From positions 124,001 to 188,000 of the IMG/VR virus record IMGVR_UViG_3300009430_000004: DNA of 64,000 bases, one strand, 5' to 3'. The notes beneath the pieces were generated by a model. The model was given only the letters and a program-made list of their open reading frames with translations. It was not told the origin of the DNA and searched no databases. The position numbers were made by a program, and so were the translations under genes. Below, one piece after another: positions 2,090-63,333 of the stretch. How positions within the stretch are numbered: the stretch's first letter is position 1; the number at the start of each line of letters is the position of its first letter.

Positions 2090-2102
2090 AACATAAATAT
2101 AA
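2090..2102 (+). promoter_or_regulatory. Late-class promoter motif AACA-N6-TAA
   Basis: AACATAAATATAA just upstream of the RBS of 2123..2995; one of 16 exact intergenic copies. Confidence 0.7.
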
Positions 2103-2122
2103 TTAAATAGAATTCAGAAAGG

Positions 2123-2995
2123 GTGAAAAAGATGAGCGATATTTTAAAATTACACGATAAAATCAATAGTAATGACACCTTATCATTTGAGTATAAGCCA
2201 TCTGTTCTTACAAGAACCCGAGTAATCGGCGGTTACGTCCATTTTACAGATAAGAATGGTATAAGCCAGTTAGGAGAAGTGCTCTTCGATGAAGAGAATC
2301 AGATAGTTCTTGGTGGTGCATTATTCGTTTTGGAAAAAGTATTCGGGGTGCAATCACCTCTTACAGTAGACTATCTGAATAATGTTATGGGTATAGCCAA
2401 TACTGGTACGCCAATTACAGACATTTATCCAAAAGATAACGTTGTTTGTTTATTTGGTGTAGGAACAGGAGGCTGTGGAGACTCAATTAATTCGGTAAGG
2501 GATGTTAAATTCTATGAAAGAGAAATCTTCGATATGGTTCCTTTCAGAGTAACAGACATAGCTTTATCTGAAACTGACCAACAGAAATATTGGTTCAAGA
2601 AAGTGTTAGGTAACGGAAAAACTGCTTACTACCTGAAAAATTTCGAAGCTTCACCTCAAATAAAGGTACTCTGGAAAGATGCACAGGGAGATGAAGATGG
2701 TACAGAAGTAGAAGCAGGAGTTCATAATACCACAAGAACGGAACCAATTGAATCATTTGTTGAAATGATTCTTAAGGTAACAAAGAAGGATATTAGAGAA
2801 TGGTTTGAAATGAATGGTCATATCGAACAAACTAGGGTTAATTCTATAGGCTTATTTACAGGTGTTAAAGGTCAATTGGCTAACATGAGCACAGATTACA
2901 AACAAGTAAAAATGTTCTCAAAACTTAACATCAATAACGAAATGTTAACCCTGTCAAAAGATTTAACAATTATTTATAGAATATACACATCTTAA
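2123..2995 (+). CDS. Putative virion structural (baseplate-like) protein
   Basis: 290 aa; late-class promoter; FGVGTGG motif and a C-terminal 'LTIIYRIY' strand typical of tail/baseplate proteins. Confidence 0.45.
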   Translation: MKKMSDILKLHDKINSNDTLSFEYKPSVLTRTRVIGGYVHFTDKNGISQLGEVLFDEENQIVLGGALFVLEKVFGVQSPLTVDYLNNVMGIANTGTPITDIYPKDNVVCLFGVGTGGCGDSINSVRDVKFYEREIFDMVPFRVTDIALSETDQQKYWFKKVLGNGKTAYYLKNFEASPQIKVLWKDAQGDEDGTEVEAGVHNTTRTEPIESFVEMILKVTKKDIREWFEMNGHIEQTRVNSIGLFTGVKGQLANMSTDYKQVKMFSKLNINNEMLTLSKDLTIIYRIYTS

Positions 2996-3009
2996 CAAAT
3001 AAAAGATAG

Positions 3010-3054
3010 ATATAATAGAGTAGCTTATGTTACTCTATTATATTTCTCTTTTTT
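3010..3054 (+). terminator. Intrinsic terminator
   Basis: ATATAATAGAGTA-loop-TACTCTATTATAT followed by a T-rich tract. Confidence 0.75.
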
Positions 3055-3067
3055 AACATCTATATAA
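3055..3067 (+). promoter_or_regulatory. Late-class promoter AACA-N6-TAA
   Basis: AACATCTATATAA upstream of the RNAP beta'-C gene. Confidence 0.7.
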
Positions 3068-3092
3068 GAAATTTATAGAAAGGGGAGATACG

Positions 3093-4301
3093 ATGAGTAA
3101 GTTACCTGATAAGGAGAAAGCTTATCTATTAAGCTTGAAACCTGAAGATATAACATTTGATTTATTAGTGGACTTATTTGCAGATACTGCAAAGGTTGTT
3201 GATGGAAAAGCAAAGACTATTCCTAGCAGGATTAAAACTCATGACGAGTTTGATTTAAATCCTGGTGAGTATTTCAACAAAGAAAAGGTTCATACAAATG
3301 CTGGTCTTTTCATATATAATAAACTTATTGTGGAAAGAAGATTATCTGGAGTGTTAGGCTATGTCAATACTCCACTAAATAAGGGAGCCGTTGAAAAAAT
3401 AGAGGATAAACTATCAAATGCATTACTTAATGATGAAATTACAGTTAATGATATGGTTGAATATCTGGACAGAACTCAATGGTTAGCAATGCAATTTCAT
3501 GCTGTTGTGAGTGGTTCATTCACGATGAATACCTTAAAACCAAATACTAAGGTAGTTAATGAAAGAAAGCGTTTATTAAAAGAAAACCGAGAAAAACTCC
3601 AGAATGGAGATGTTGATGCTGCGGTTAAGATTGAAAAACAATTATTGGCTGTTGCAGATAAGGAGCTTGCTGGTGACCCAGGTCTAGATTTATACAAGTC
3701 TGGGGCAAGAGGTTCATTCGGTAATAACTTTAAGAATATTAGTGTTATGAAAGGTCCCGTATTTAATCCAGTAACAGGTCAATTCGATATAGTTGAATCT
3801 AATTTTATGGAAGGTATCAATAAGGAAGAGCTTCCTATTTACGGCAATGCTATCATTACTGGAGCATATCCTAAAGCAATCGGTACTGCCGTTTCAGGAT
3901 ATTTCAGTAAACAGATTATAGCAGCTCTTCAAGCCGTTGTACTTGATAAAATAGGTTCAGATTGTGGTACTAAGGGGTATCAGAAAATAACAATACATCC
4001 AGGTTCAGAGAAAGATTTCTTATATCGTTTCGTCATAGAGGGAAGTAAGTTAGTTGAATTAACTGACAAGAATATTTCTAGCTATGTCGGTAAGGAAGTT
4101 AAGATGAGGTCACCTATGTATTGCATCGGCAAGAAGTTATGTAGAGCATGTGCTGGACGAATGTATGAAAAACTTGAAATTGATAATATTGGACTTACAG
4201 CAGCAAGAGTTTCCTCAACGCTGCTGAACTTATCAATGAAAAAGTTCCATGACTCCAGTGCAAAAATAACTCAAATAAAGATTAATGATTTAGTGTTATA
4301 A
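3093..4301 (+). CDS. rpoC: Split multisubunit RNA polymerase beta' subunit, C-terminal part (probably virion RNAP)
   Basis: SGARGS, SNFMEG, TAVSGY (bridge helix), DCGT, RSPMYC..LCRACAG zinc site, IGLTAA...LSMKKFH (trigger loop). Confidence 0.9.
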   Translation: MSKLPDKEKAYLLSLKPEDITFDLLVDLFADTAKVVDGKAKTIPSRIKTHDEFDLNPGEYFNKEKVHTNAGLFIYNKLIVERRLSGVLGYVNTPLNKGAVEKIEDKLSNALLNDEITVNDMVEYLDRTQWLAMQFHAVVSGSFTMNTLKPNTKVVNERKRLLKENREKLQNGDVDAAVKIEKQLLAVADKELAGDPGLDLYKSGARGSFGNNFKNISVMKGPVFNPVTGQFDIVESNFMEGINKEELPIYGNAIITGAYPKAIGTAVSGYFSKQIIAALQAVVLDKIGSDCGTKGYQKITIHPGSEKDFLYRFVIEGSKLVELTDKNISSYVGKEVKMRSPMYCIGKKLCRACAGRMYEKLEIDNIGLTAARVSSTLLNLSMKKFHDSSAKITQIKINDLVL

Positions 4302-4303
4302 TA

Positions 4304-4335
4304 AGAGAGCATACCGTTTTGGTATGCTCTTTTTT
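4304..4335 (+). terminator. Intrinsic terminator
   Basis: AGAGCATACC-GTTTT-GGTATGCTCT followed by a T tract. Confidence 0.8.
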
Positions 4336-4338
4336 ATT

Positions 4339-4348
4339 TATATATTAT
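4339..4348 (+). promoter_or_regulatory. Early-class promoter motif TATATATTAT
   Basis: Exact recurrent 10-mer right after the terminator, upstream of 4382 and the beta'-N gene. Confidence 0.65.
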
Positions 4349-4381
4349 AGATTGGTAATAAAAAGTATAGGAGGTAAATAT

Positions 4382-4615: not shown

Positions 4616-6028
4616 ATGAAGCGAAACAATGTTCGACTCATCAAATTAAATTGGAATGAGGAGTGTGAAAAAGATTTTATTATAGGTAAGGGTTTTGAAA
4701 TAACCCAACCCGCATTTAAGGGTGAAGAAAAATGTATGTATGGAACCCACTCCCCCCTATATGCAACTGACTGGGAAGATGAAGATGCTTTCTCTGAAAG
4801 ATATTCCTGTCAGTGTAAAAATCTTAGGGGTAGGGTGTATGAGGACGAGATATGTCCTGTATGTAATACAAAGGTTAGATTTAGAGATGTTGATTTAAAG
4901 ATGTTTGGATGGATAAAACTGTACAATCAGAATGTAATTCATCCAATATTTTATAAGATGATTAAATCGGTAATTGGAGATAAGCAATTTACTGAGATTA
5001 TAGAATTCGATAAAGACATGACCAAGAACGGAATAATTATAAATAAGAAAAGTAAGAATCCGTTTAAAGGTATAGGTCTTATCGAGTTTGAAGAAAGATT
5101 CGATGAGATTATGGCTTATTTCAGAGAGAAGAAAAAGAATAAGATTGACATTATAGATGAAATAATGAATGAAAGAGAAAAGGTATTCACATCATGTATA
5201 CCTGTTTACTCAGCAGTATTAAGACCTGTTTCATTCAGAGGTGAAACTTACTTCTATAATTCTATAGATAAGAAGTATAACTCAATCTTTTCATTGTCTC
5301 GTTTACTGAATAATACAGGTCCAGTATCCAGTAAAAAGAAGGTTAAGAAGAAAAAGATGGATGAACCTACAATACTACAAACACTTCAAAAGAAGTTGAT
5401 AGAACTGTGGGAATTAATATTCATGCAGATAAACCAGAAGGATGGTCATATAAAAGACCAAATACTAGGTGGAAGAATAAACTTCTCTGCAAGAAATGTT
5501 ATCATACCTGATCCTGACCTTAGAGCCGATGAAATTAGATTGTGTTACTTATCTTTCCTTGAATTATTCAAGTATCAAGTAATATCTCATCTAGTTAAGA
5601 TGAATGACATAACAGAAAACGAAGCTTATGAGCAGTGGTACAAAGCCACTATTATATATAACCCGAAGATATATGAATTAATGATGCACTTGGTTAAGAA
5701 GAGAAAACCTAAAGTGCTTATAAACAGAAACCCGACAATCAACTACGGGTCAATGTTATTGATGAAAGTTGTTGATATCAAGAATGAATATAAAGAAGAT
5801 TATACAATGAGTCTACCAATACAAATACTTGGTGTACTTAATGCAGACTTCGATGGAGACATTCTCAATATTATAGCAATGATGACCAAGAAAACTGCTA
5901 AGGCATTTGATAAGATATTCAATCCTAGAAAGAATATGTTTATTTCTAGAAATGATGGATTATTTAATGATGACTTTAATCTATTCAAAGACCAGTTAAC
6001 AGGTTTGAGGGAATTCAATTGTATCTAA
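4616..6028 (+). CDS. rpoC: Split RNA polymerase beta' subunit, N-terminal/catalytic part (probably non-virion RNAP)
   Basis: Zinc finger CQC...CPVC, LGGRINFSARNVI, INRNPTI and the catalytic NADFDGD motif. Confidence 0.93.
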   Translation: MKRNNVRLIKLNWNEECEKDFIIGKGFEITQPAFKGEEKCMYGTHSPLYATDWEDEDAFSERYSCQCKNLRGRVYEDEICPVCNTKVRFRDVDLKMFGWIKLYNQNVIHPIFYKMIKSVIGDKQFTEIIEFDKDMTKNGIIINKKSKNPFKGIGLIEFEERFDEIMAYFREKKKNKIDIIDEIMNEREKVFTSCIPVYSAVLRPVSFRGETYFYNSIDKKYNSIFSLSRLLNNTGPVSSKKKVKKKKMDEPTILQTLQKKLIELWELIFMQINQKDGHIKDQILGGRINFSARNVIIPDPDLRADEIRLCYLSFLELFKYQVISHLVKMNDITENEAYEQWYKATIIYNPKIYELMMHLVKKRKPKVLINRNPTINYGSMLLMKVVDIKNEYKEDYTMSLPIQILGVLNADFDGDILNIIAMMTKKTAKAFDKIFNPRKNMFISRNDGLFNDDFNLFKDQLTGLREFNCI

Positions 6029-6371: not shown

Positions 6372-6455
6372 ATTAATTATTCCTGTGAAATATCAGGAAT
6401 AATTAATTTTTTATTTTCTCTAAAACTGTTAATTAATTAATGGAGGTGTATAAAA

Positions 6456-6959
6456 ATGAGTGATAATCAAAACCAACAAGGAACTGACATATTTGATAAG
6501 ATATTCGGTTCTTATTTAGGAATTGACGAAGAGTCTCTGAAGAAAAGAGCAAAGGAATTCATTGACAACAAAGAAATTGAAGTGACTCAATTTGCTTTTA
6601 ATGAATTAGTCACTAGAATATTAGTAGAACAGGGTTTAATAACCAAGGGAGAATTTAATAGTCGATATAACCAAATAATTGCTGGATATTTGACTATAGT
6701 GTTAGATTCAGCACAAAAGGAGAAAGAGACATTAGTAAATACTCAAGATAATGAAGTTCCCTTTAAGAAACAGGACATTCGATTTAGGGAAATACTGATT
6801 GAAACTATTAAGGAGAAGATAATTAACCTTCTTGATAAAAAACAAGAGGTTGAAATAAAAAATGGTGATGAGGAGGATGAAGTACATGGCACAACACAAA
6901 TCAGGATCGACCCAGGGCATAATAGCTCCATCGGGAATGAGAATGCCGACGGAAAATGA
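6456..6959 (+). CDS. Hypothetical protein
   Basis: 167 aa; GGAGG RBS. Confidence 0.7.
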   Translation: MSDNQNQQGTDIFDKIFGSYLGIDEESLKKRAKEFIDNKEIEVTQFAFNELVTRILVEQGLITKGEFNSRYNQIIAGYLTIVLDSAQKEKETLVNTQDNEVPFKKQDIRFREILIETIKEKIINLLDKKQEVEIKNGDEEDEVHGTTQIRIDPGHNSSIGNENADGK

Positions 6960-7827: not shown

Positions 7828-7858
7828 CGTATTTTTGGAGCAAACACATATATATTAT
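7828..7858 (+). promoter_or_regulatory. Bipartite motif CGTA-N17-TATATATTAT
   Basis: CGTA TTTTTGGAGCAAACACA TATATATTAT; one of six copies with identical spacing. Confidence 0.75.
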
Positions 7859-7929
7859 TAATATAAGATGTAAATATATAATGCATCTAATCTATCCACT
7901 ATATAGTGGTATTCTATGGAGGGACAACC

Positions 7930-8601
7930 ATGATAAAATTTGAAAACTTAGACCTGCACGTTGATGCAAACATATTTCCAGAAAGATATAGAAAGGAAGC
8001 AATAGATTTCTTAACCCAGTTGGATAGAGAAGACTATGATACTCTATATTATGCTTGGAATGGTGAAAACTCTTTCGACACAATAGCAATGCTTAAAGGA
8101 ACACATTTCACAACTATGAAAACATTCATATTTGCTGAATTATACAGACTTCATACTAAAAAGGAGGGTATCACCGTTCAGTTTATAAAGAGTGTTTTCT
8201 TGAATGATCTTGGTGCAAAAGACATTATGACATGTCAGTTAAAAAGATACATTTCTTGTTACGAAACATATAATGATGCAAAGGATATGTTTGTAAACTG
8301 TGACGAAACTGATGTAATTAATGCCTTTAGAAGCCTAGCAATGGGTGCAGGTGTTCGATTACAAGAAATGGGTATGTCACCTTTTAACGGAAATAAAGTT
8401 CATTTAGGATTCTCACCAGATGGTTTATTTGAACTGATGGAGCTTGTTTGTGATGAAAGTCATGGACTTGATATGGGAGGATGTAATTGTAAAACCCATG
8501 AGACATATAATATCAAAATTATATCAGCTCTTGCTGCAATTGCGTTACTTAAGGGGCATCTTGAGAAAGGTTTAACAATGAAGGAGGTTGCTTGTGAATA
8601 G
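7930..8601 (+). CDS. Hypothetical protein
   Basis: GGAGGG RBS before ATG 7930 (MIKFENL...). Confidence 0.7.
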   Translation: MIKFENLDLHVDANIFPERYRKEAIDFLTQLDREDYDTLYYAWNGENSFDTIAMLKGTHFTTMKTFIFAELYRLHTKKEGITVQFIKSVFLNDLGAKDIMTCQLKRYISCYETYNDAKDMFVNCDETDVINAFRSLAMGAGVRLQEMGMSPFNGNKVHLGFSPDGLFELMELVCDESHGLDMGGCNCKTHETYNIKIISALAAIALLKGHLEKGLTMKEVACE

Positions 8602-8705: not shown

Positions 8706-8768
8706 CTATGCTCCGTTATATTTTTTTCTTTTCATCAACATTTAATTAATTAAATAAACAGTAAAGAG

Positions 8769-10618: not shown

Positions 10619-10628
10619 TATATATTAT
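10619..10628 (+). promoter_or_regulatory. Early-class promoter TATATATTAT
   Basis: Exact 10-mer upstream of ppk1. Confidence 0.65.
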
Positions 10629-10673
10629 TACAACAGATAAAAATACAGCGTACGTTATAAGGAGGGTAAAAAA

Positions 10674-14717: not shown

Positions 14718-14800
14718 TTCCTCCCTTAGACAAAGGATAAGAAAACTTGCGGTTTGTAGTTTTGTATTTCTATCTTTTACTTTAATGTTGACAAAAGATA

Positions 14801-16830: not shown

Positions 16831-16929
16831 AGTTTTTCACCTCTTTTTCACTAACTTATTTTTATTATAATGTTTTAATATACAAAATAAAGTCTCCATA
16901 CTAACGTTTCATTAGTATGGAGAATATTA

Positions 16930-19578: not shown

Positions 19579-19634
19579 TTATCTCACCCCTCTATAATTT
19601 ACTATTAATATAAAGTTTAAATAAAATAAAATAA

Positions 19635-30687: not shown

Positions 30688-33600
30688 TTAAGTTAATGTT
30701 GAAACCTCTACAATTCTATTTTGAGGTTGCACCAATCTATTAGTAAATTTAGCCCTGTTCTTAAATAAGTTATCAAGTTCTGTATCTGTCATACCCCTCT
30801 TACAAACAATCAAATCACGAAAGAATGAGTTACATGGAGTTGTCGGACTATTCTCACTATCCCATCCCCAACCCCCTAGGTTTAAATCGTAACCAAACTT
30901 AGTTACATAACCATTAGGAGCCATGGAATATCCCGAAATAACTCTTGTGTATACACCCTCTGTGTATGACCATTCTTTTATTGTCAAAGTTGAGCCTGAT
31001 TTAACAAGACTAATCATTCTTGGATTATTATAATATTTAGCTGGGTCTATATCTGTTGGTGAAGCTTCAGAAATCTTATTTACCTGATGAGTTTTCCCCC
31101 ACCAAATGTAGTTACCACCAACAGTGTTATCTCCACACCCCAAGGAATCTAAATTAAAACTACCAAACTTATCATCTGATGTACCAACAGGTATCTTGAA
31201 ATAAACTATCGACCAATCACCATTCCAATTTAAACCTAAGTCTCGATGAAGATTAAAGGCTAATAATGATCTTTCTCGGATTCCATCAACAAATGGTGTG
31301 ATAAAAGGTCGTTTTTCCCATTGTACTCCACTAACATAGATAAGCCCTTTATCAGGAGAATATCCCCATACTAATGCATCAGCCGCTATACCCCAGTCAC
31401 AACTGTCAAAGAACTTTGTTGTTAGAGATATCCTATGCCAAATATCATCCTCTATCAAATGAGCATTGTACTTATCACTTGAAGAAACCCATGTAGCCCA
31501 GTCGGTTTTTAAAATAGCAAATGAATAAGGATTAATTCCTGCTTTATTTATTACTTTAACATATGCTGATGAAGTGATATAATCACCTATATTACCACTG
31601 AAAGCACCATTATAGACACCTTCCCATCCATGCCACTGTTCACTATCACCAGTCTTTTCAAATTCCCATGTTGTTGGACCTATATACGGTCTTATTGTAT
31701 TCTTTCGTATAATCCCTCTAACTGTCCAGGGGTCGGTATGTCCACCAACAGTAGCCCATAGGTTCTCTGTTCTTCCACCAACCCATGCATACCCATCTTC
31801 AAATACTACATTTTCCTCTATTGCTGCTTTAAATTGTCCAGTTGTATCCTTAGTATTAATACTAAGAGGGAAATATACAGCGTCAGAAGGTATATATGGA
31901 GGTAGTTCTTTTACCTTCGTTCTTAATTCACCAGTGCTAGTTATAGGCATCATGCTACCAGTTAGACTTTGGATTTCACTCAGAGTTAAACATCTGTTAT
32001 ACACATGCATATCCCTAACACTACAATTAGATTTTTCATTGAAGTAAATTTTATTAGCTGAGAATTCTATTGGAATTTCAGCGGTCATATATAATACTTG
32101 TGGTGCTGAAGTTAATGGTGTTCCATCAACTAAACCGAATGCTCCTGCCAATCCACCATCTATATACCACATTTCAACTAGATTCCATCCTTTAACTAAT
32201 GGTATATCTACAACGGGGTTTGACGGCACATTCCAACCACCAACCCAAACTACTGGTCCATTATTAATTCTCATAGCACCCCAGTCATCAGCAATATATT
32301 TATGCTGAACTGTTACTGCTTCTGAGCAATACACAAATGTTCTCCATACAATCCCAGCATTATACTGAGATATATTCATATTAAAATCAGGGGTATCATC
32401 ATCTAAATCCTTAAATGATGGGTCAGTGTATTCACTTATTTCATACCCTCCCCTGCCGATACCAACCCCTTTTACTGTATATCGAGTCCATTTATTTTTA
32501 TACTCAGTTGTTTCTAGACCATTCTTATAAATTTTAAACTCATTGCCTGTCTTTGTTAGAATAAGTTTATTGAACTTATTGTCAAGGATATGCTTCTTCT
32601 CTGACACTAAGGTGAAATCACCATAGAAATCAAATCTTGATGTTATTTCTAGCTTAGCATCTCCTCGTTCACCATTTATTCTAGCTGTCGGACAATTTCT
32701 TTTCTCAAGTTGTATATCAGCGAAATCAACGGTTGTATGTGAAAGCTGACTATTCATGAATACCCCACTGAATCGTCTATGAGGACCTTCAACGAACGTA
32801 TATGGGGCATATGCCTGTTTCCACCCATCTTCTAGATCCTCAGTATAAATTGGGAGGGTACAACGCCAAGCCCCATTATCAAGGAACCACCACCCTATAG
32901 AAAATGGTATACCATTCCCCTTGATAACTTTAAATTTGAATGACCAAACCCATGTTTCACCAGTATTATATGTGATTTCTGGTCCTTCATATGATATGGG
33001 CCAATCTCCTCCATTACCGTCTTTTCTAATACACCTAATTCCATTTCCATAAGGTGTTTTGATGTATTCATGAAAAGTCTGACCATCTCCAGTACCAACA
33101 ACCCAATTTTTATATCCATTAGAAAAATTCCCATTTTCAATGTAATTCTTACTAGCCTCATGAATGGAAATAAAATCCTGTCCCAATGGGAATACACAGT
33201 TTGTAGCTTTTACATTAGGGTTATCTAGCATTATATAATTGATATCCCTAAATTCGATTTTATAACTCTCCCAACGACCAAAATCCTCTATTTGAAACCA
33301 CGCTCTCAAGGAATGTACAAAGTCACTAGGTAATGTAAATTTAATAGCGAAATCCACCCACTGACCATTAATATCTCCAGTTCTCCAAGTTTTAGCGATT
33401 ACCCATCTATGAGGATTGGGTTCTACACTCATATAGTGGAATCCTATACTGGTCAAGGATTCATCATCTGGTGTTTTCCAGCATTTTATTTTTCCAGTTA
33501 TCAGAAATGTTGAACCATCATAATCATAGTAATCTGTGAATGTTGGTCCATGTACATCTCTTGTACTTGTAATAACTTTATCTATATAATATTCTGTAAG

Positions 33601-37521: not shown

Positions 37522-37600
37522 AAAAAATCACTCCTTTCTAGCTATTTCTTTATTAAATTGTTTTTAATAACCAAAATTATTCCGAGTTAAAGGGCAAATG

Positions 37601-38440: not shown

Positions 38441-38537
38441 ATTATCAGCCCCTTTCTTTTTATTAATTTAATGTTTGTGATATGAAAAAAATACATAAAA
38501 AATAAGGAATCGTGATATAAAACACGATTCCTCACCT

Positions 38538-39692: not shown

Positions 39693-39783
39693 GGGTTGTC
39701 ACTCCTTCTTTGTTATAGATTCTTAATAGAATGTTAAAAAAATAAAAGTTAAATGGTGATTAACACCATTTAACCTTATTTTC

Positions 39784-41254: not shown

Positions 41255-41356
41255 ACTTTTTAATATTATTAGTATGTTTCCATAGTATGTAAGAAAAAAT
41301 AGTCTCTGATTATTAAAATATTTTTTGACAAACTTTAATATAAAACAAATTAAGAG

Positions 41357-41366
41357 TATATATTAT
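41357..41366 (+). promoter_or_regulatory. Early-class promoter TATATATTAT
   Basis: Exact 10-mer upstream of the nuclease/helicase operon. Confidence 0.6.
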
Positions 41367-41380
41367 ATAACCGAGGAGGG

Positions 41381-49154: not shown

Positions 49155-49238
49155 GTTTTCCTAAATACAGAAAAAATAATTTAGATTATATATTATATGT
49201 AGGTATCAGAACAAATTTATAAGAAGGGATGGGTTTAT

Positions 49239-49400
49239 ATGGAACCACCAAAGGTTTTAGCAGACCTTATGAAACCTTTGACTCAAAGGAACATACAATT
49301 GGCGACAGAAACGCCAGAAGAAAAAATGCAACGAATAAAAGACCAATTTGGTCTTTACCATGGTCCTGGTAAAAGGAAGAAAAAGAAGAAGAAAAAATAA
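49239..49400 (+). CDS. Small basic protein with a poly-Lys tail (53 aa, not in ORF track)
   Basis: MEPPKVLADL...GPGKRKKKKKKK*; preceded by TATATATTAT (49187) and AACA-N6-TAA (49210). Confidence 0.65.
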   Translation: MEPPKVLADLMKPLTQRNIQLATETPEEKMQRIKDQFGLYHGPGKRKKKKKKK

Positions 49401-50088: not shown

Positions 50089-50225
50089 ACCAAATAAATT
50101 ATAAATTATAATTGGGATAACAGTTAATTAAGAAATTTAACTGATATTTCAGTTATATATTATTATGCTGTAATCAGTAAATAAATAATCAAAAAAATAA
50201 TTATATTATTAGGAGGTAAACAATC

Positions 50226-50705
50226 ATGGCTAAAGGAAAAAGAAAATTCGTTGAGAAAATCGCTCGTATTAAGGAGCTTCAGAAAGAGGCTGAAAAGGAA
50301 AGAAGAAAGGCGATAATTGAGTGTGCTCACCAAAATGAAAAAGGCAAGCTCAAGATTCACCCAGTTAACGAAAAGGGTGATTATGAATGTAAATACTGTG
50401 AAGAGCAGTTCAACATGAACTCCATCAGCAGAAGTAACATTGAGGACGCAATCGAAACAATGCACAATGCTATTCAGCAAATCAGATGTTTCTCTGATCC
50501 TGAGGACGATGCTAAGCTTGTAAGATTACTTGGCGAACTTGACTTCAACATGCAGGAAGTTGGCGAGCTCTATGAGAGAATCGTTAACCTATACGGCAAG
50601 AACAAGAAGAAGAACAGGGGTGACAAGTACAAAGATCATGATAGCTTCGGTAGCTACGGTGCATCCTCATTAAGCTTCATTGGTGGCGGAAAGAAAAATA
50701 AATAG
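50226..50705 (+). CDS. Basic zinc-binding protein, probably highly expressed
   Basis: CAH...CKYC; Lys/Arg-rich termini; C-ending codon bias; two promoter motifs (50119, 50154). Confidence 0.7.
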   Translation: MAKGKRKFVEKIARIKELQKEAEKERRKAIIECAHQNEKGKLKIHPVNEKGDYECKYCEEQFNMNSISRSNIEDAIETMHNAIQQIRCFSDPEDDAKLVRLLGELDFNMQEVGELYERIVNLYGKNKKKNRGDKYKDHDSFGSYGASSLSFIGGGKKNK

Positions 50706-53347: not shown

Positions 53348-53387
53348 AAAATATATATTATTGATATAGCAATGATGAGGGAGGTAA

Positions 53388-56466: not shown

Positions 56467-56538
56467 AAGGAGGATTATCCTCCTTTATTTTTTTTCCAAT
56501 TAATTGGAACAAATTAGTAATTACCATAAGAAGGGGAG

Positions 56539-57063
56539 ATGGGGATGGATAGACAACCAAGGATTATAGATGAAACCTTTTTAATGGAGTTCGCTAAATC
56601 CTATAACACACTGAAAGACGATGGCATGATTCCAGTTGGCATCAAAAAGAAGCTAATGGTTGAATTTGAATGCAAAGAATCGTCTTACTACAGATATCTT
56701 CAACTAGCAAGAGATAAAGGGTATGTGTCCGACAGTTATGAGGAGAACACGACAGCTATGAGAAAAAGAGAAGCCAAACTCAGAGAAGCTCATAAAGTTA
56801 TTGAACCTGATATGGCTGCAACTCTTAGAGAGATACTGTACGGTAATGAAACAAAGGTAGAGGAGAAAGCTCCTGAAAAAGAAAGCGACATATTTATAAG
56901 TTTACATAGTGGTTATGAAGACTCTAAAGATGCTGAAAAATATTTTGTTGTAAAAGAGGAGTCAAGTATCGCTCAACCCACGCCAGAACCGCCCAGTAGG
57001 GTTAAACCTTCAATCGGTACTATCTTGATGGATTACGTCAAGAAAATTTTCACAAAAAGATAA
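56539..57063 (+). CDS. Hypothetical protein, possible N-terminal helix-turn-helix
   Basis: 'LMVEFECKESSYYRYLQLARDKGYV' is HTH-like; late promoter at 56508-56520. Confidence 0.45.
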   Translation: MGMDRQPRIIDETFLMEFAKSYNTLKDDGMIPVGIKKKLMVEFECKESSYYRYLQLARDKGYVSDSYEENTTAMRKREAKLREAHKVIEPDMAATLREILYGNETKVEEKAPEKESDIFISLHSGYEDSKDAEKYFVVKEESSIAQPTPEPPSRVKPSIGTILMDYVKKIFTKR

Positions 57064-57101: not shown

Positions 57102-58268
57102 TTATGCTTCTTCCTTTTCATAAAGGACATTAAATACTTCCCTTATATCCATCTTACCATCAAACATATCCTCATTGAACTTTCTTAACCAAGCTGAAAG
57201 CATTTGTTGCTTCTCATATGTTGGGTCATTGAGGTAGTTTTCATAGTAACCTTTATAAGCTGCAAGGTTATCCTTTAATTCTTCCTTCAAATCCTTCGGA
57301 AGGTTTGGATCATCCAAATCCCTTTCGAGTTTGTTAATCATATTCTTCATTCTTGTCTGATTCTTAGGATGTACACCTATGAATGTAGACATGATATTCT
57401 GCATAATTCCAGCTATGTCATCAATAACATTAAGAACTGGAACATTTCTAACTATTCTGTTGTACATTTTATTTGGGTCATTCTGCAACTTATCTAACGC
57501 TGTTGCAAGTGGCTGTGCATACCCATATGATGCAGCAAAGCTATCAGAGAATCTCTCCATACCATATCTAAATAGGTTTGATATGTCGAAATTAACAACC
57601 TGTTGAGCCATAGCAAGTGGGCTACCAAGTAATGGTCCAGAAATGTGATAAAGAAGTCTATTAAGCCCAGCACCTATATTATAGAATACTGATAGATACT
57701 TCTTAAAGAACCTTTCAACACCCATTCTGATTTCAGTTATTAACTGTACAACCCAATGCTGAACAGCCCAGCCTATAGGACTGTATAACAGAGTTGGTAT
57801 TGTGCATAGGAAGTAAAATGGAGATGTGTCAAAATTGTGTCCTATCTCATGAAGTATGATAGCCATCATTTCTTTCTCATTCAATTTAGTCTGAGAAATA
57901 AGTGCTGTGTCAAGGAACACATAGATTTTCAATCTCTCATTGATAAATTTACCTGATTCTTCCCTTTTCTCGATGTTCTTAAGATACATCATAGGGAAAG
58001 ATGATATTGGTGTGCAGGCATTAGGTACTGAATCTTGCCAGTGAATTTTAATATACTTAACTCCAAAGAAATCAGCAAGAATCTTCTGTAATTTCTGGTT
58101 AGGTTCTGATTTATCTATATCAGTCATCGCCCTGAAAATACTCTTATCGTTATCCTTTCTGATTATCTCTGCAATTTTAGCAAGTTCTGCCTCCGCTGCT
58201 TCGAATTGTTTAGGCTTACCTAGATAAGCTTCCATAACAGGGTTATTTTTTCTTGAAAAAATAGCCAC
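57102..58268 (-). CDS. Zincin (M48-like) metalloprotease-domain protein, probably virion-associated
   Basis: AIILHEIGH, ERFSDSFAASYGY..LATALDKL, HP...R; late promoter at 58304-58316. Confidence 0.7.
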   Translation of the reverse strand: MAIFSRKNNPVMEAYLGKPKQFEAAEAELAKIAEIIRKDNDKSIFRAMTDIDKSEPNQKLQKILADFFGVKYIKIHWQDSVPNACTPISSFPMMYLKNIEKREESGKFINERLKIYVFLDTALISQTKLNEKEMMAIILHEIGHNFDTSPFYFLCTIPTLLYSPIGWAVQHWVVQLITEIRMGVERFFKKYLSVFYNIGAGLNRLLYHISGPLLGSPLAMAQQVVNFDISNLFRYGMERFSDSFAASYGYAQPLATALDKLQNDPNKMYNRIVRNVPVLNVIDDIAGIMQNIMSTFIGVHPKNQTRMKNMINKLERDLDDPNLPKDLKEELKDNLAAYKGYYENYLNDPTYEKQQMLSAWLRKFNEDMFDGKMDIREVFNVLYEKEEA

Positions 58269-58303: not shown

Positions 58304-58333
58304 TTAATTTATTGTTTTAAAACAATTAAATAA
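58304..58333. promoter_or_regulatory. Back-to-back divergent late promoters
   Basis: Near-palindrome TTAATTTATTGTTTTAAAACAATTAAATAA gives AACA-N6-TAA on both strands. Confidence 0.7.
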
Positions 58334-58358: not shown

Positions 58359-59519
58359 ATGGCAAATGATAGAGTATTATTAAATGAATTATACCCTTTA
58401 ATAGAGAAGGGTCTATCCAAAAAAGAAAATACCCAGAAGCTTAAGCTGGCTGTAAGCCAATTCCTTGATAGGAACAATGAAAAATTAACCACTAATGGTC
58501 CAGTATATAGAATTATATTCTCAGAAGAGGATGCTAATAAACTATACGAAGCTATAGAAGTTGACCCGCTTACAATCAAGGGAATAATTAATAGGTCACC
58601 GACAATTAAGAGTCAGTGGCAGATAATGAATAATCCTTTCAACTCTGCAATAGCCTTGACTATTAGATATTATAAGGTTAACAAGAACCCTGAAATGGTT
58701 AATGCAACGCTTATATATTTAACAATGTCAATGTATCCATCATTACACTATAAGTATTTTCAATATGAACCTAATGAAAATATAATGAATTATACCATCA
58801 ATAATCTATCAAATAAGTTTAAAATCAAACAAACTGGTACAATTTATGCTGCCTTAGTAGATACTGTACAAGTTAGTGATAGGACTTATACTGACGATTT
58901 GATACGTGGTACTGATAAGGATATCGTTGACTATATCGAAGCAGTTAAGACAAGAATGAATAGTTTGCTTAGAAAAATATCAAATGAATTTTATGAGAAT
59001 GATAAAAAAAAGAATTATCTTAATACTGAAAGCGATAGCTTCGAAGAAGATAATTATCATGAAGCTGATAGCAATATCTACGCTGTGGAACGTGTTACTA
59101 ACAATGTCGTCCTAAAACTTATAGTTAATGGACCAAATATACAGCTAGTTAATATTGCGGCTAAAATGAGCCAAGTAAGTGTTAGTGAACTGAGGAATTA
59201 TGTTAATACCTTGGTTATCGGGGAGAATCGTGAACAAATTAAGACTGTTGTTGAATGTATTTTATTCTTATATTTATTTGATTCACAGAACAAAGTTGAG
59301 GATATAGGAAGCAATAAATTCCTATTCTATTGTCTTGAAGTATATAAGAAATCTAATACTACAGACGAGAATATCATAAAGATTAAGAAGATTCTTGATG
59401 AATGGTTGGAAGACTTAGGAACATACAAAAAAACTCAGAGACTTGCTACTATCAATAATTTTAGAAGGGCTTTGTTTACCTTCTTCGTTCTAAGTATTCA
59501 ACATACGGGAAATAGCTAG
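58359..59519 (+). CDS. Conserved hypothetical alpha-helical (probably virion) protein
   Basis: 386 aa; late promoter at 58321-58333. Confidence 0.55.
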   Translation: MANDRVLLNELYPLIEKGLSKKENTQKLKLAVSQFLDRNNEKLTTNGPVYRIIFSEEDANKLYEAIEVDPLTIKGIINRSPTIKSQWQIMNNPFNSAIALTIRYYKVNKNPEMVNATLIYLTMSMYPSLHYKYFQYEPNENIMNYTINNLSNKFKIKQTGTIYAALVDTVQVSDRTYTDDLIRGTDKDIVDYIEAVKTRMNSLLRKISNEFYENDKKKNYLNTESDSFEEDNYHEADSNIYAVERVTNNVVLKLIVNGPNIQLVNIAAKMSQVSVSELRNYVNTLVIGENREQIKTVVECILFLYLFDSQNKVEDIGSNKFLFYCLEVYKKSNTTDENIIKIKKILDEWLEDLGTYKKTQRLATINNFRRALFTFFVLSIQHTGNS

Positions 59520-59760: not shown

Positions 59761-60300
59761 TTATTTTTCTAACTCATTTATTAACTTATTCATTATAACA
59801 GTATTACTTATATATCGTAATACAGTTGGATCATTACTTAATGCCTGCCTGCATATATCTTCAGTTTGAATCTTGCAGAATTGTAATGCTCTAGGAGTTT
59901 TCTTAACAGCTTCCATGCATATTTCTTCAGTCTGTTCTTTTACAAATTGTAATGCAGTACCATTCTGCCTAACAGCTTCTATACACAGCTCATGAGTTTG
60001 GTTATCCTTTATCATATTAAGTATCCTACCATTACGCTTAACAGCTTCAAGCTTCATTTCATATGTAGGATTCATTATAAACTGATATGACAAAGGATTG
60101 TTTCTAATAGCCATTAGACATAATTCCTCAGTTTGGCTTTTAACATATTCCAAGGCATCACCATTCTGTGTAATGGCTACACGACATGCTTCCTCAGTTT
60201 GTGGACTAAAATACCTCAATAACAATCCGTCACGCCTTAAATCGTCAATAATAACAGATGGTAAATGATAGTGGTTTCCTCTCATAGCAAATTCTCCCAT
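59761..60300 (-). CDS. DUF4116-like helical repeat protein
   Basis: Tandem ~24-aa repeats 'QTEE.C..AV.QNG.ALQFVK'. Confidence 0.75.
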   Translation of the reverse strand: MGEFAMRGNHYHLPSVIIDDLRRDGLLLRYFSPQTEEACRVAITQNGDALEYVKSQTEELCLMAIRNNPLSYQFIMNPTYEMKLEAVKRNGRILNMIKDNQTHELCIEAVRQNGTALQFVKEQTEEICMEAVKKTPRALQFCKIQTEDICRQALSNDPTVLRYISNTVIMNKLINELEK

Positions 60301-60338
60301 AGATTTTATACCTCCTAATTATATTAGTATCTATATTA

Positions 60339-60369
60339 ATAATATATACTTAGCGTGTCGTAAAATACG
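60339..60369 (-). promoter_or_regulatory. Bipartite motif CGTA-N17-TATATATTAT
   Basis: Minus strand reads CGTA TTTTACGACACGCTAAG TATATATTAT. Confidence 0.75.
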
Positions 60370-61347: not shown

Positions 61348-61462
61348 AATATCCCCTCCTATCTATTATATAATGGTTGGGAATATTTTATATAAGAACT
61401 CAATTTTTTCTTTACGAAAAAAACAATTAAATAAGACTAACTAAATAGAAAGGGGTGAGTTT

Positions 61463-62182
61463 ATGGCTATAACAAAACAAACTAGAAAACAAATGGAAGC
61501 CTTAATATATTCCGTTTTCGATGCTCTCGACCCTTCCAAAACAAATAGTAATAAATACAAGGATTTCTTCGGGGAAATGTCGGATTCACAGTTCGATTCA
61601 TTTTTTAGAAATTTCTTTAAGGATGAAAATCAGTATTTAACTCTTGATGTTGTGGATTATGAGAGAGATTTTAAGATTGAAAATGTTGAGCAAGCAGCTA
61701 AGATACTTGGGGTTCCATTATTTGAGAAAGTAGTTATGCCATTTGTTAATAAAAATACAGATAAACCAGTCATTACTAAATATGAAGTACCTGTGGGATA
61801 TGTGCATGTTAAGAGGGTTCAGCAGATGCTCAGTAAGAAGAACACTACTTCTACTGAAATAGCTTCCCGTTCAGCATTAACAGGACAGGTTGTTGGAAAG
61901 GATAAGAATGCAAGAGACTCTGATGCTGAAAACTTCGCATTAGTTACGCTTAATGCTAATGAGACATTAAGAGAGTTTATGGGTCCAAGAGCTGACGACT
62001 TAGTAATGAAGAATGAAATGTACGCTTCAATAGCACAAAAGGGATATGTTTCCCTAGACCAATTAACTAACCATGTTGAAAATAAGACTACTTTAAATGC
62101 CCTCGATGTACATCTAATAGGTATGGGTATTAAGTCAGACCTTGTTACTCAAGGATTATTGGTTAAGAAATCACTAAAATAA
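61463..62182 (+). CDS. rpoB: Split RNA polymerase beta subunit, C-terminal fragment (probably virion RNAP)
   Basis: VPVGYVHVKRVQQMLSKK, RSALTGQV, ENFAL, LREFMGPRADD match the beta C-terminal motifs (GxxYxxKL, YSxxTQQP, EVWAL, LQExLTxKSDD); late promoter at 61422-61434. Confidence 0.8.
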   Translation: MAITKQTRKQMEALIYSVFDALDPSKTNSNKYKDFFGEMSDSQFDSFFRNFFKDENQYLTLDVVDYERDFKIENVEQAAKILGVPLFEKVVMPFVNKNTDKPVITKYEVPVGYVHVKRVQQMLSKKNTTSTEIASRSALTGQVVGKDKNARDSDAENFALVTLNANETLREFMGPRADDLVMKNEMYASIAQKGYVSLDQLTNHVENKTTLNALDVHLIGMGIKSDLVTQGLLVKKSLK

Positions 62183-62185
62183 AAA

Positions 62186-62220
62186 AAATAAGGTATGGAG
62201 AAATCCATACCTTATTTTTA
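62186..62220. terminator. Bidirectional terminator
   Basis: AAATAAGGTATGGA-GAAA-TCCATACCTTATTT. Confidence 0.8.
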
Positions 62221-62224
62221 TTTT

Positions 62225-62554
62225 TTAATATGTTACTATATACTCATCATCTTCCCCATCGAATACACGTTTTGCTTCCATAACGGATTTGTATAAATCG
62301 AATAGAGTAATCGGATGAAAAGTATTAAGATACTCAATAAAAGTTCTTCCATCATTAACTATAGCCAAGGATTTATCACGATCAAATGTAATCGTAACCT
62401 TTTGAGTATTATCAAATTCATTGACAAATATAAACTTTGGAAAAACGTTATTAACGTTTACAAACCTAGTAGTTTGACAAACCTCATGATTTATTGATGT
62501 TCTAACCTTGTTGTACATTGACTGATAATCTTTTAATTCAAACATTTCTTTCAC
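62225..62554 (-). CDS. Hypothetical protein
   Basis: 109 aa; AAGGAGG RBS, GTG start. Confidence 0.65.
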   Translation of the reverse strand: MKEMFELKDYQSMYNKVRTSINHEVCQTTRFVNVNNVFPKFIFVNEFDNTQKVTITFDRDKSLAIVNDGRTFIEYLNTFHPITLFDLYKSVMEAKRVFDGEDDEYIVTY

Positions 62555-62564
62555 CCTCCTTATA

Positions 62565-63152
62565 TTAACCGTAAACTATAATGCCTTTTTTGGTACTGAT
62601 ACATCCAGTTAACCAACCAAAGGAATCTTGTTCACCTGCAAATACTCTATAACCTGCTCCTTCGACCTTCTTAATATTGGTCCAATTACATCTTCCATTA
62701 CTGGATATCAATGCACCGCAAGCTAACCCATCTATAATACGAGCAGCATCATCCTCATTATCACTATTCATGTCAATATATAATCGACCTTCATAGTCAT
62801 ATGACTTAACTTCAGATTCACCAGATTCAACTTTCTTGAGCATGTCAAGAAGTTCTGTCAAGTAATCCTTAGTTTCTGGATGTATCTTCTCTTCAAGAGG
62901 TGAAGGGTAATTATCAAAATGTCTCCAACCGAGACTGAGTAAGTATTCAAAAGCTTCAGCATTTCTATTACTGCTGAAATCTGAAACAGTCATTGAGATT
63001 TTGCTATAATCTGTTCTAACATTGAAAGTCTTAGCTTCCTCATCCTTTTGTCCGAGTTCTTTCCTTGTTAGGTTAACTCCATCAAAAGATACAATCTCAA
63101 GAATGCTACCCATATAGGTTTTAATAAAAACTGGTTTTTCTAATCTTATCAT
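62565..63152 (-). CDS. Hypothetical protein
   Basis: 195 aa; GGGAGG RBS; C-terminal 'GEQDSFGWLTGCI' motif. Confidence 0.7.
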   Translation of the reverse strand: MIRLEKPVFIKTYMGSILEIVSFDGVNLTRKELGQKDEEAKTFNVRTDYSKISMTVSDFSSNRNAEAFEYLLSLGWRHFDNYPSPLEEKIHPETKDYLTELLDMLKKVESGESEVKSYDYEGRLYIDMNSDNEDDAARIIDGLACGALISSNGRCNWTNIKKVEGAGYRVFAGEQDSFGWLTGCISTKKGIIVYG

Positions 63153-63247
63153 GATTTAATTCCTCCCACAGAATCAAAATATTTTTCACTAGCATCTATA
63201 TTTACTAGCGGAACATACAAATATATTATCTACGTATGTACACAATA

Positions 63248-63278
63248 ATAATATATATTCATCATGTTTTAATTTACG
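63248..63278 (-). promoter_or_regulatory. Bipartite motif CGTA-N17-TATATATTAT
   Basis: Minus strand reads CGTA AATTAAAACATGATGAA TATATATTAT. Confidence 0.75.
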
Positions 63279-63333
63279 ATTTTAATATTATAGGAACATA
63301 GAAATAATCGAAAATAATTGTGAGGTGATTATA

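What the first reader, a model, noticed from the sequence alone, without database searches (positions are those of the whole stretch)
2090..63307. AR9-type late promoter AACA-N6-TAA (16 exact copies) hints at template-strand, possibly uracil-dependent, recognition
Seen: exact intergenic copies in the orientation of the downstream gene, at 2090, 3055, 8737, 49210, 50119, 56508, 58321, 61422 and 63295 (+), and 14777, 16862, 37550, 38463, 39723, 41266 and 58304 (-). AACT and TACA variants also occur. Knowledge: the non-virion RNAP of Bacillus phage AR9 recognises AACA-N6-TA/G late promoters through deoxyuridines in the template strand of its uracil-containing genome. Inference: this phage uses the same late system and may have U-DNA, which the sequence alone cannot show.
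Basis: partly seen in the sequence, partly recalled or inferred. Interest (0 to 1): 0.6.

Follow-up and report, generated by a model that had tools for sequence, protein, structure and literature searches.

The report
AR9-type late promoters without uracil DNA
The repeated AACA-N6-TAA signal is a genuine late-gene promoter of a giant phage that brings its own RNA polymerases, as Bacillus phage AR9 does, but this phage encodes a full thymidine-making pathway and so most likely has ordinary thymine DNA rather than uracil DNA.

Summary
All 16 sites exist as listed. The whole-window count is at chance (24 vs 25.9). Non-coding DNA holds 16 against 2.9±1.7 expected in the window, and 57 against 10.0±3.1 genome-wide. 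Copies face the downstream gene 55:5, the spacing is strictly 6, and the motif is depleted inside genes. It is the top dyad in an unbiased search.

The 218-kb phage is a distant AR9 relative. It has both split multisubunit RNA polymerases, a homologue of AR9's promoter-specificity subunit gp226 outside the window, and an AR9-type early promoter (TATATATTAT-N6-G). Late motifs precede virion, tail-fibre, endolysin and virion-polymerase genes. Early motifs precede replication and non-virion polymerase genes. The promoter call is supported.

The uracil inference is not. The genome encodes thymidylate synthase ThyA (above NCBIfam's equivalog cut-off, catalytic residues intact), an adjacent dihydrofolate reductase, thymidylate kinase and a dCMP-type deaminase. 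No UGI homologue was found. AR9, BpSp, LPJP1, S6 and phiR1-37 have no ThyA, ThyX or DHFR, whereas 21 of 21 large metagenomic relatives have ThyA or ThyX. The uracil-reading helix of gp226 is altered (V206 to Q, Y210 to Q).

Best reading: the AR9 promoter architecture works on thymine DNA in a large uncultured clade, a new variant of a known system.

The parts
2090..2102 (+). late promoter AACA-N6-TAA, 20 nt before the start of 2123-2995 (virion structural protein, AR9 gp258-like)
3055..3067 (+). late promoter before 3093-4301 (virion RNAP beta-prime C-terminal piece)
8737..8749 (+). late promoter before 8769-10022 (homologue of an AR9 hypothetical protein)
14777..14789 (-). late promoter after a terminator-like hairpin; real start of the downstream gene is 14708
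16862..16874 (-). late promoter before 16213-16830
30688..30700 (-). probable internal-operon late promoter at a gene junction, 37 nt before tail-fibre-like 27999-30650
37550..37562 (-). late promoter heading the block of giant tail-fibre-like genes (33736-37521 and downstream)
38463..38475 (-). late promoter before endolysin 37652-38440
39723..39735 (-). late promoter before endolysin 38538-39692
41266..41278 (-). late promoter before virion structural protein 40286-41254 (AR9 gp280-like)
49210..49222 (+). late promoter just after an early promoter (49189), before small ORF 49239-49400; both classes together, as in AR9's continuously expressed genes
50119..50131 (+). late promoter followed by an early promoter (50156), before 50226-50705
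56508..56520 (+). late promoter before 56539-57063
58304..58316 (-). late promoter before M48-type protease 57102-58268; one of a back-to-back divergent pair with 58321
58321..58333 (+). late promoter before 58359-59519 (AR9 gp052-like)
61422..61434 (+). late promoter before 61463-62182 (homologue of the RNAP part of AR9 gp077, a virion RNAP subunit)
63295..63307 (+). late promoter before small ORF 63335-63502
6424..6436 (+). AACT-N6-TAA variant, 19 nt before 6456-6959
19605..19617 (-). AACT-N6-TAA variant, 26 nt before 16930-19578
41331..41343 (+). AACT-N6-TAA variant next to early promoter 41359, before 41381-42043
4341..4355 (+). early (virion-RNAP type) promoter TATATTAT-N6-G after a terminator hairpin, before a small ORF and the non-virion RNAP beta-prime N gene
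7851..7865 (+). early promoter before 7906-8601
10621..10635 (+). early promoter before polyphosphate kinase 10674-12833
41359..41373 (+). early promoter heading the block 41381-44868, which holds the SbcD-like nuclease and DnaB-like helicase genes
53354..53368 (+). early promoter before topoisomerase II subunit 53388-55793
60332..60346 (-). early promoter before 59761-60300
63726..63740 (+). early promoter before the tubulin-family gene that starts at 63784 and runs off the window
4616..6028 (+). non-virion RNAP beta-prime N-terminal subunit (AR9 gp270 homologue), part of the enzyme proposed to read the late promoters
3093..4301 (+). virion RNAP beta-prime C-terminal subunit (37% identical to the AR9 protein)

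Best explanation
AACA-N6-TAA is the late promoter of this phage's own non-virion multisubunit RNA polymerase. That enzyme is built from four split beta and beta-prime pieces (one encoded at window 4616-6028) plus a sigma-like specificity subunit homologous to AR9 gp226 (genome 37427-38911, outside the window). By analogy with AR9, transcription should start at the A that follows the T, giving short leaders of roughly 12-40 nt before strong GGAGG-type ribosome sites. The non-virion polymerase genes and the gp226 homologue sit behind a second motif, TATATATTAT-N6-G. This matches AR9's early promoter, which is read by the polymerase injected with the virion. The result is a two-polymerase cascade: replication and non-virion polymerase genes early; virion, tail-fibre, lysis and virion-polymerase genes late; some genes under both. 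Unlike AR9, the DNA is most likely thymine DNA, because the phage carries thymidylate synthase, dihydrofolate reductase, thymidylate kinase and a deaminase. The specificity subunit would then accept 3'-TTGT-5' where AR9's needs 3'-UUGU-5'. I think template-strand reading by base flipping is retained. The gp226 I207, W208, S245, aromatic 246 and aromatic 263 equivalents are kept, and so are the beta-N R363 and K375 equivalents. The pocket helix is remodelled (V206 to Q, Y210 to Q, followed by R-E). Shown: motif statistics, placement and gene classes, homologies, the thymidylate genes. Inferred: the start site, which enzyme reads the motif, thymine in the virion DNA, which strand is read.
For: Motif. 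The same pipeline recovers AR9's own promoters (64 sense, 12 antisense). AR9 consensus and mapped start sites: PMC5312081. Mechanism and key residues: PMC9209446. Polymerase and gp226 homologues with conserved gene order (GroEL, hypothetical, gp226, primase). The gp226 homologue matches PDB 7S01 chain A by sequence (E 1e-18). Its AlphaFold model (pLDDT 84.5) has 7s01_A as the top Foldseek hit (E 2e-18). Early motif with G six bases downstream, placed before the non-virion RNAP genes and the gp226 homologue. Late-driven genes are virion proteins, tail fibres, endolysins and virion RNAP pieces. Thymine pathway: ThyA PF00303 E 5e-72; NCBIfam NF002495 352.9 bits against a cut-off of 327; best PDB match B. 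subtilis ThyA with the Cys nucleophile, R-S-x-D, Asn and H-x-Y kept. DHFR lies directly downstream (E 3e-47), with thymidylate kinase and a deaminase nearby. ThyA, ThyX and DHFR are absent from AR9, BpSp, LPJP1, S6 and phiR1-37. ThyA or ThyX is present in 21 of 21 large relatives. No UGI homologue. gp226 helix differences. Beta-N R363 and K375 conserved.
Against: No chemistry was possible on the DNA, so thymine is inferred from gene content. The contrast between the thymidylate-synthase-bearing clade and the U-DNA group amounts to one phylogenetic split, so the 22:0 vs 0:5 table is not 27 independent observations. Every residue except Gly has the C-beta that clashes with thymine's methyl in AR9, so V206 to Q does not by itself predict thymine tolerance. 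Some thymidylate-synthase-bearing relatives keep Val at that position. gp226 identity to AR9 is only about 25%, so residue-level inference is soft.
Confidence: 0.75

Rival explanations
1. One reading: same promoter system, and the genome is uracil DNA with uracil-dependent template-strand recognition as in AR9.
For: The late and early motifs are almost identical to AR9's. The nearest cultured relatives all have or are presumed to have U-DNA. A deaminase homologous to the PBS1/AR9 dCTP deaminase is present (PMC12697855). No dUTPase or UDG gene was found.
Against: An intact ThyA with adjacent DHFR and a thymidylate kinase would work against a dU-only pool. The five U-group genomes have none of ThyA, ThyX or DHFR. 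No UGI homologue was found. The only homologue of the PBS1-type dTMP phosphatase is weak and lacks the first Asp of the DxDxV motif. V206 and the aromatic at 210, invariant in the U group, are replaced.
Confidence: 0.08
2. Same promoter and thymine DNA, but the gp226 homologue no longer reads the template strand. It reads the non-template AACA or the duplex, as ordinary sigma factors read the -10 element.
For: The residues that define AR9's template-strand pocket helix have changed (V206, Y210, L211, K212). The residues that hold the non-template AACA in AR9 (S245 and the aromatic at 246) are kept. phiKZ gp68, a more distant homologue, works on T-containing double-stranded DNA (PMC9209446).
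Against: I207, W208 and the aromatic at 263 of gp226, and R363 and K375 of beta-N, which contact the flipped -10 base and -9 G, are conserved. The short extra helix is still predicted at residues 219-226. The invariant promoter core across relatives is the A-C at -10 and -9, the two bases read most tightly on the template strand in AR9.
Confidence: 0.2
3. The motif is not a promoter of the phage polymerase. It is AT-rich chance, a host-sigma promoter, or an RNA-level signal in the 5' leaders.
For: The whole-window count equals chance. Intergenic DNA is AT-rich, and the motif is short.
Against: Non-coding enrichment is five- to six-fold over composition-matched shuffles. The strand bias is 55:5 and the spacing is strict. 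The motif is depleted on both strands of coding DNA, most strongly antisense, which an RNA leader signal would not explain. The distance to the start codon varies while the internal spacing is fixed. It has no resemblance to -35/-10 promoters. The cognate specificity subunit is present.
Confidence: 0.03

Closest known systems
Bacillus phage AR9/PBS1 non-virion RNAP late promoters (AACA-N6-TA/G) read by the gp226 holoenzyme
   Same: Same bipartite motif and spacing. Same gene classes behind it. Same five-subunit enzyme set with conserved gene order around the gp226 gene. Same early promoter core with a G six bases downstream. Same depletion of the motif inside genes (PMC5312081, PMC9209446).
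   Different: Proteins are only about 25-37% identical. The base after TA is nearly always A here but T, A or G in AR9. The gp226 2.1bis helix reads N-K-Q-I-W-T-Q-R-E instead of D-x-V-I-W-x-[YF]-L. Thymidylate synthase and DHFR are present here and absent in AR9. No UGI homologue. A tubulin gene is present and has no AR9 match.
Engineered AR9 gp226 V206G, the thymine-tolerant enzyme of Fraser et al. 2022 (PMC9209446)
   Same: One sub-clade of the relatives carries Gly at exactly this position and encodes ThyA (loci L064-L066, L069, L080-L082). This is a natural counterpart of the designed change.
   Different: This phage has Gln, not Gly, and the clade as a whole is variable at the site (G, L, T, V, I, P, A, D, Q). 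Any thymine tolerance must come from a wider remodelling, including Y210 to Q/K.
phiKZ non-virion RNAP with gp68 (TATG late promoters, thymine DNA, phage nucleus)
   Same: Thymine DNA (inferred here), a split multisubunit RNAP with a gp68/gp226-family fifth subunit (Foldseek third hit 8que_B), and a tubulin-family gene.
   Different: The promoter motif is unrelated. No chimallin was detected with the phiKZ protein or with Pfam PF25677. The RNAP subunits are much closer to AR9's than to phiKZ's.
Bacterial sigma-70-family recognition of the -10 element
   Same: A short element about 10 nt upstream of the start, read by a sigma2-like domain after strand opening.
   Different: In AR9 the template strand is read, not the non-template strand. 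There is no -35 sequence. Which strand is read here is unknown.

Membership tests
AR9-type non-virion RNAP late promoter system | Bipartite AACA, six unspecified bases, TA, placed upstream of late genes in their orientation | tested here: met
   Top dyad in an unbiased search, 51 sense vs 3 antisense, spacing strictly 6. 57 vs 10 expected in non-coding DNA. The AR9 control scores likewise.
AR9-type non-virion RNAP late promoter system | Four split beta and beta-prime core subunits plus a gp226-family specificity subunit | tested here: met
   tblastn matches to all four AR9 core genes and to gp226 (E 7e-20), with conserved neighbours. PDB 7S01_A by sequence and by fold.
AR9-type non-virion RNAP late promoter system | A separate early promoter (extended AT-rich element, six bases, then G) read by the virion RNAP and driving the non-virion RNAP genes | tested here: met
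   About 47 intergenic sense copies of TATATATTAT, with G six bases downstream in 31. They lie before the beta-prime C, beta C, beta N, beta-prime N and gp226-homologue genes.
AR9-type non-virion RNAP late promoter system | Transcription starts at the last base of the TA/G element | not testable with these tools
AR9-type non-virion RNAP late promoter system | Template-strand recognition and activity on single-stranded DNA | not testable with these tools
   Only indirect: the I207, W208, aromatic 263, beta-N R363 and K375 equivalents are conserved.
AR9-type non-virion RNAP late promoter system | Uracil dependence: 2.1bis helix with invariant Val206 and an aromatic at 210 | tested here: not met
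   Gln at both positions. The U group has 6/6 Val and 6/6 Tyr/Phe. The clade of this phage is variable at 206 and has Gln/Lys at 210 in 52 of 54.
Uracil-DNA phages (PBS1/AR9, BpSp, S6, phiR1-37) | No thymidylate synthesis genes | tested here: not met
   ThyA is above the equivalog cut-off with catalytic residues kept; DHFR is adjacent; thymidylate kinase is present. The five U-group genomes have none of ThyA, ThyX or DHFR.
Uracil-DNA phages (PBS1/AR9, BpSp, S6, phiR1-37) | Uracil-DNA glycosylase inhibitor (Ugi) | tested here: inconclusive
   No match to AR9 Ugi among all six-frame ORFs of 30 aa or more (best E 3.1). Such small inhibitors evolve fast and have unrelated analogues.
Uracil-DNA phages (PBS1/AR9, BpSp, S6, phiR1-37) | Enzyme that destroys thymidine nucleotides (PBS1-type dTMP phosphatase, or dTTP pyrophosphatase) | tested here: inconclusive
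   A weak homologue lies at genome 33588-34295 (26% over 125 aa). The first Asp of the DxDxV motif is replaced, and there is no Pfam or PDB match. Function per PMC12697855.
Uracil-DNA phages (PBS1/AR9, BpSp, S6, phiR1-37) | dCTP deaminase supplying dUTP | tested here: inconclusive
   A deaminase homologue is present (30% identity to the AR9 protein). dCMP versus dCTP specificity cannot be read from sequence, and either would also feed ThyA.
Uracil-DNA phages (PBS1/AR9, BpSp, S6, phiR1-37) | Deoxyuridine in virion DNA | not testable with these tools
   Needs chemistry on DNA.
Nucleus-forming jumbo phages (phiKZ-like, Chimalliviridae) | Chimallin shell protein together with PhuZ tubulin | tested here: inconclusive
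   A tubulin-family gene is present (PF00091, E 8e-22). There is no match to phiKZ chimallin or to PF25677, but that model is narrow.

The most novel reading that the evidence does not exclude
A large, uncultured clade of jumbo phages, probably infecting Clostridia, runs the AR9 two-polymerase programme with the same AACA-type late promoter on thymine DNA. Its gp226-family subunits would be natural thymine-accepting versions of the only known template-strand, base-flipping promoter reader. One sub-clade carries the very Val-to-Gly change that was engineered in AR9. Promoter letters shift between sub-clades along with the subunit (AACA, AACT, GACA). On this reading, uracil dependence in AR9-like phages is a lineage-specific specialisation laid over an older promoter code. 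These thymine-DNA members, which also carry a tubulin gene, must separate phage from host promoters by some means other than uracil.
Probability: 0.5. Interest if true: 0.7.

Novelty: new variant of a known kind. Interest (0 to 1): 0.55.

Why it matters
AR9's late promoter recognition is the only known case of a multisubunit RNA polymerase reading a flipped-out base on the template strand, and it has been presented as tied to uracil DNA. If the same motif and a homologous specificity subunit work in a phage that makes thymidine, promoter architecture and DNA chemistry are separable.

That would give natural sequence variants for learning how U versus T is discriminated. Examples are Gln, Gly, Leu or Pro at position 206 and Gln or Lys at 210. 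It would also give co-varying promoter letters for learning how the -11 and -8 bases are read.

There is a practical caution for annotation too. An AACA-N6-TA promoter or a gp226 homologue should not be used to predict U-DNA. Presence of ThyA or ThyX is a better first test.

Finally, the work points to more than 60 related metagenomic contigs that extend the AR9 lineage well beyond Bacillus, Staphylococcus, Listeria and Yersinia phages.

Tried and rejected
- Whole-window enrichment: none (24 vs 25.9). The claim holds only for non-coding, gene-oriented copies.
- Near-identical DNA in the phage collection: none.
- tblastn of the gp226 homologue against phages found only BpSp weakly. AR9 gp226 had to be used as the query to collect the U-group homologues.
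- TACA-N6-TAA variants: not enriched (19 sense, 13 antisense).
- ThyX, trimeric dUTPase and UDG in this genome: none. The dimeric dUTPase model gave only a sub-threshold hit inside a structural gene, taken as noise.
- AR9 Ugi homologue: none.
- Chimallin: none, with the phiKZ protein or with Pfam PF25677. This is not strong evidence of absence.
No start-site test was possible.
- Tree of gp226 homologues: the careful search did not finish in the time allowed. Only the quick tree is reported, with 14 fragments and duplicate rows left out.
- V206 alone as a marker of uracil dependence: rejected, because some ThyX-bearing relatives keep Val there.
- No complex prediction was run, since no new protein-protein binding claim is made.

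Full report
**Context.** The window is bases 124001-188000 of a single 218,088-bp virus record with direct terminal repeats and 33.5% G+C. It has no near-identical DNA in the phage collection.

**The observation.** All 16 listed sites are exact AACA-N6-TAA on the stated strand.
- The window as a whole holds 24 matches against 25.9±5.8 in dinucleotide shuffles, so the motif is not over-represented overall.
- The signal lies in where the copies sit. With a simple greedy ORF map (223 ORFs, 92% coding), the window's 5,070 non-coding bases hold 16 copies against 2.9±1.7. The genome's 17.3 kb of non-coding DNA holds 57 against 10.0±3.1.
- Upstream of start codons there are 55 copies in the gene's orientation and 5 in the opposite one. 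The first A lies mostly 27-50 nt before the start, ahead of a GGAGG-type ribosome site.
- I counted every 4-mer/gap/3-mer dyad in upstream regions, sense against antisense. AACA-N6-TAA came first (51 vs 3). Spacings of 5 or 7 gave 4 each.
- Inside genes the motif is depleted relative to codon-shuffled genes: sense 21 vs 32.9±5.9, antisense 5 vs 26.9±5.4. The AR9 control shows the same trend. This fits a signal that fires wherever it occurs.
- Two sites that looked misplaced are fine. 14777-14789(-) follows a terminator-like hairpin, and the downstream gene really starts at 14708. 63295-63307(+) precedes a small ORF at 63335.
- AACT variants are modestly enriched (14 vs 4), with three clean intergenic examples in the window. 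TACA variants are not enriched (19 vs 13).

**What the phage is.**
- PHROG scans find split RNA polymerase subunits at 3093-4301 and 4616-6028, plus topoisomerase II, an SbcD-like nuclease and a DnaB-like helicase.
- The best relatives of the 3093-4301 protein are AR9, PBS1 and BpSp (37% identity), then the Staphylococcus S6 group, Listeria LPJP1 and Yersinia phiR1-37.
- I fetched AR9 and ran all ORFs against it. 66 have matches, often in the same local order.
- All four non-virion RNAP core pieces are present: beta-prime N at window 4616-6028, and beta-prime C, beta N and beta C elsewhere in the genome. So are the virion RNAP pieces, including window 3093-4301 and 61463-62182.
- Genome 37427-38911 encodes a 494-aa homologue of AR9 gp226, the promoter-specificity subunit (E 7e-20). 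It is flanked as in AR9 by GroEL, a hypothetical gene and primase.
- That protein matches PDB 7S01 chain A by sequence (E 1e-18). Its AlphaFold model (pLDDT 84.5) has 7s01_A as the top Foldseek hit (E 2e-18), and phiKZ gp68 as the next distinct protein (rank 3).

**Promoter classes.**
- AR9's mapped late consensus is AACA-(6N)-TA/G with the last base as the start site. Its early consensus is AAATATATATTAT-(6N)-G (PMC5312081).
- This genome also has the early element. TATATATTAT is the most over-represented 10-mer upstream of genes. There are about 47 intergenic sense copies, with G six bases after TATATTAT in 31 of them.
- Early elements precede the non-virion RNAP genes, the gp226 homologue, DNA polymerase, ligase, topoisomerase and the SbcD/DnaB block.
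- Late elements precede major head, sheath, tape-measure, virion structural, tail-fibre-like, endolysin and virion RNAP genes. Some genes have both classes (49189/49210, 50119/50156), like AR9's continuously expressed class.

**Uracil or thymine.**
- The genome encodes a ThyA-family protein at 108765-109604 (PF00303, E 5e-72). It scores 352.9 bits on NCBIfam's thymidylate synthase equivalog NF002495, whose cut-off is 327.
- Its best solved relative is B. subtilis ThyA. The alignment keeps the Pro-Cys nucleophile, the R-S-x-D motif, the Asn that selects dUMP, and H-x-Y.
- Dihydrofolate reductase follows directly at 109615-110121 (E 3e-47). Only a true thymidylate synthase, which oxidises its folate, needs this partner.
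- Thymidylate kinase (102397-103131), a ribonucleotide reductase and a dCMP-type deaminase lie just upstream.
- None of these ThyA, DHFR or kinase ORFs has an AR9 match. Family searches find no ThyA, ThyX or DHFR in AR9, BpSp, LPJP1, S6 or phiR1-37.
- There is no homologue of AR9's Ugi.
- The only homologue of the PBS1/AR9 dTMP phosphatase (function from PMC12697855) is weak and lacks the first Asp of the DxDxV motif.
- A phage that invests in dCMP to dUMP to dTMP to dTDP is very unlikely to exclude thymine from its DNA. This is an inference from gene content, not a measurement.

**The specificity subunit.**
- In AR9 the -10 uracil is flipped into a pocket between the gp226 2.1bis helix (residues 205-214) and beta-N. 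V206 blocks a C5 methyl, and V206G makes the enzyme accept thymine. Y210 stacks on the -9 G. The valine is reported as invariant in U-DNA relatives (PMC9209446).
- Three alignments agree, anchored on an invariant Trp. The six U-group proteins read D-x-V-I-W-x-[YF]. This phage reads N-K-Q-I-W-T-Q-R-E.
- Across 54 full-length metagenomic homologues, position 206 is variable (Gly 9, Leu 7, Thr 6, Val 6, Ile 6, Pro 5, Ala 5, Asp 5, others). Position 210 is Gln or Lys in 52.
- Other contacts are kept: I207, W208, S245, the aromatics at 246 and 263, and beta-N R363 and K375. The model still shows a short separate helix at residues 219-226.
- I read this as a retained architecture with a remodelled base pocket. 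Val at 206 is not by itself diagnostic, because some relatives keep it and still encode ThyX.

**Relatives.**
- The gp226 homologue has 275 database relatives, many on contigs of 200-260 kb. The only organism names attached to any of the listed relatives (the best 120 of 275) are Herbinix and Romboutsia, which points to Clostridia hosts.
- A profile scan of IMG/VR gave 61 loci. Of 21 large records searched, 10 have ThyA and the other 11 have ThyX.
- Counting this phage, the table is 22 of 22 against 0 of 5 in the U group (Fisher p 1.2e-5).
- On a quick tree the U group is one side of a single branch (SH-aLRT 93). The contrast is therefore one evolutionary event, not many.
- I fetched three complete relatives and ran the same dyad count. 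G010 uses AACA-N6-TAA (46 vs 4). G013, whose subunit has Gly at position 206, prefers AACT (30 vs 2) alongside AACA. G007 uses GACA (32 vs 6).
- The A-C core and the TAA are constant in all of them. AR9 differs in having T, A or G after TA.

**Verdict.** The AR9 kinship is real. The uracil inference is most likely wrong. The result is a new variant of a known system: AR9-type late and early promoter codes and enzymes operating, by inference, on thymine DNA in a broad uncultured clade.

**Main uncertainties.** They are the DNA chemistry, the start sites, and which strand is read.

Noticed in passing
window 10674-12833 (+): Full-length polyphosphate kinase PPK1 with all four Pfam domains (E 1e-30 to 1e-69), behind an early-type promoter at 10621. 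This is an unusual metabolic gene for an AR9-like phage and has no AR9 match.
   Followed up: partly
window 63784-64000 and beyond (genome 187784-188914): Tubulin-family gene (PF00091, E 8e-22) behind an early promoter at 63726. It has no AR9 match. No chimallin was detected with the phiKZ protein or with PF25677, so it could be PhuZ-like or TubZ-like.
   Followed up: partly
window 20233-37521 (-): Six consecutive giant ORFs (651-1261 aa) with tail-fibre-like PHROG matches and 37-38% G+C against about 32% elsewhere. None has an AR9 match. This may be a host-range module acquired or evolving separately.
   Followed up: partly
window 58304-58333: Two late promoters lie back to back on opposite strands, 4 nt apart. 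They form a near-palindrome and drive divergent genes (M48-type protease and an AR9 gp052-like gene).
   Followed up: no
window 50202-50225; genome 57469, 188946, 199414: A nearly identical cassette of about 25 nt (AT-rich run, TATATTAT, then TAGGAGGTAA) recurs directly before four start codons. Two copies are preceded by the same AACA-A7-TAA late motif. It looks like a duplicated promoter-leader unit.
   Followed up: no
genome 33588-34295 (locus L007:13588-14295): Weak homologue of the AR9/PBS1 dTMP phosphatase (26% over 125 aa) in which the first Asp of the HAD DxDxV motif is replaced. It may be a relic or a repurposed copy of a U-DNA pathway enzyme.
   Followed up: partly
relatives G007, G013, G010 (loci L083-L120): The late motif differs between sub-clades while the A-C core and TAA stay fixed: GACA in G007, AACT with AACA in G013, AACA in G010. 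G013's specificity subunit has Gly at the AR9 V206 position.
   Followed up: partly
whole genome, coding regions: AACA-N6-TAA is about five-fold depleted on the antisense strand of genes (5 vs 26.9 expected by codon shuffling). This suggests selection against antisense late transcripts. AR9 shows a weaker version of the same pattern.
   Followed up: yes
window 37652-38440 and 38538-39692 (-): Two adjacent endolysin paralogues share an N-terminal catalytic domain, and each has its own late promoter.
   Followed up: no
genome 103735-106146: The ribonucleotide reductase has a barrel domain plus a TSCPD domain in a single large protein. This differs from AR9's class Ia pair with NrdI and fits an anaerobic host.
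   Followed up: no
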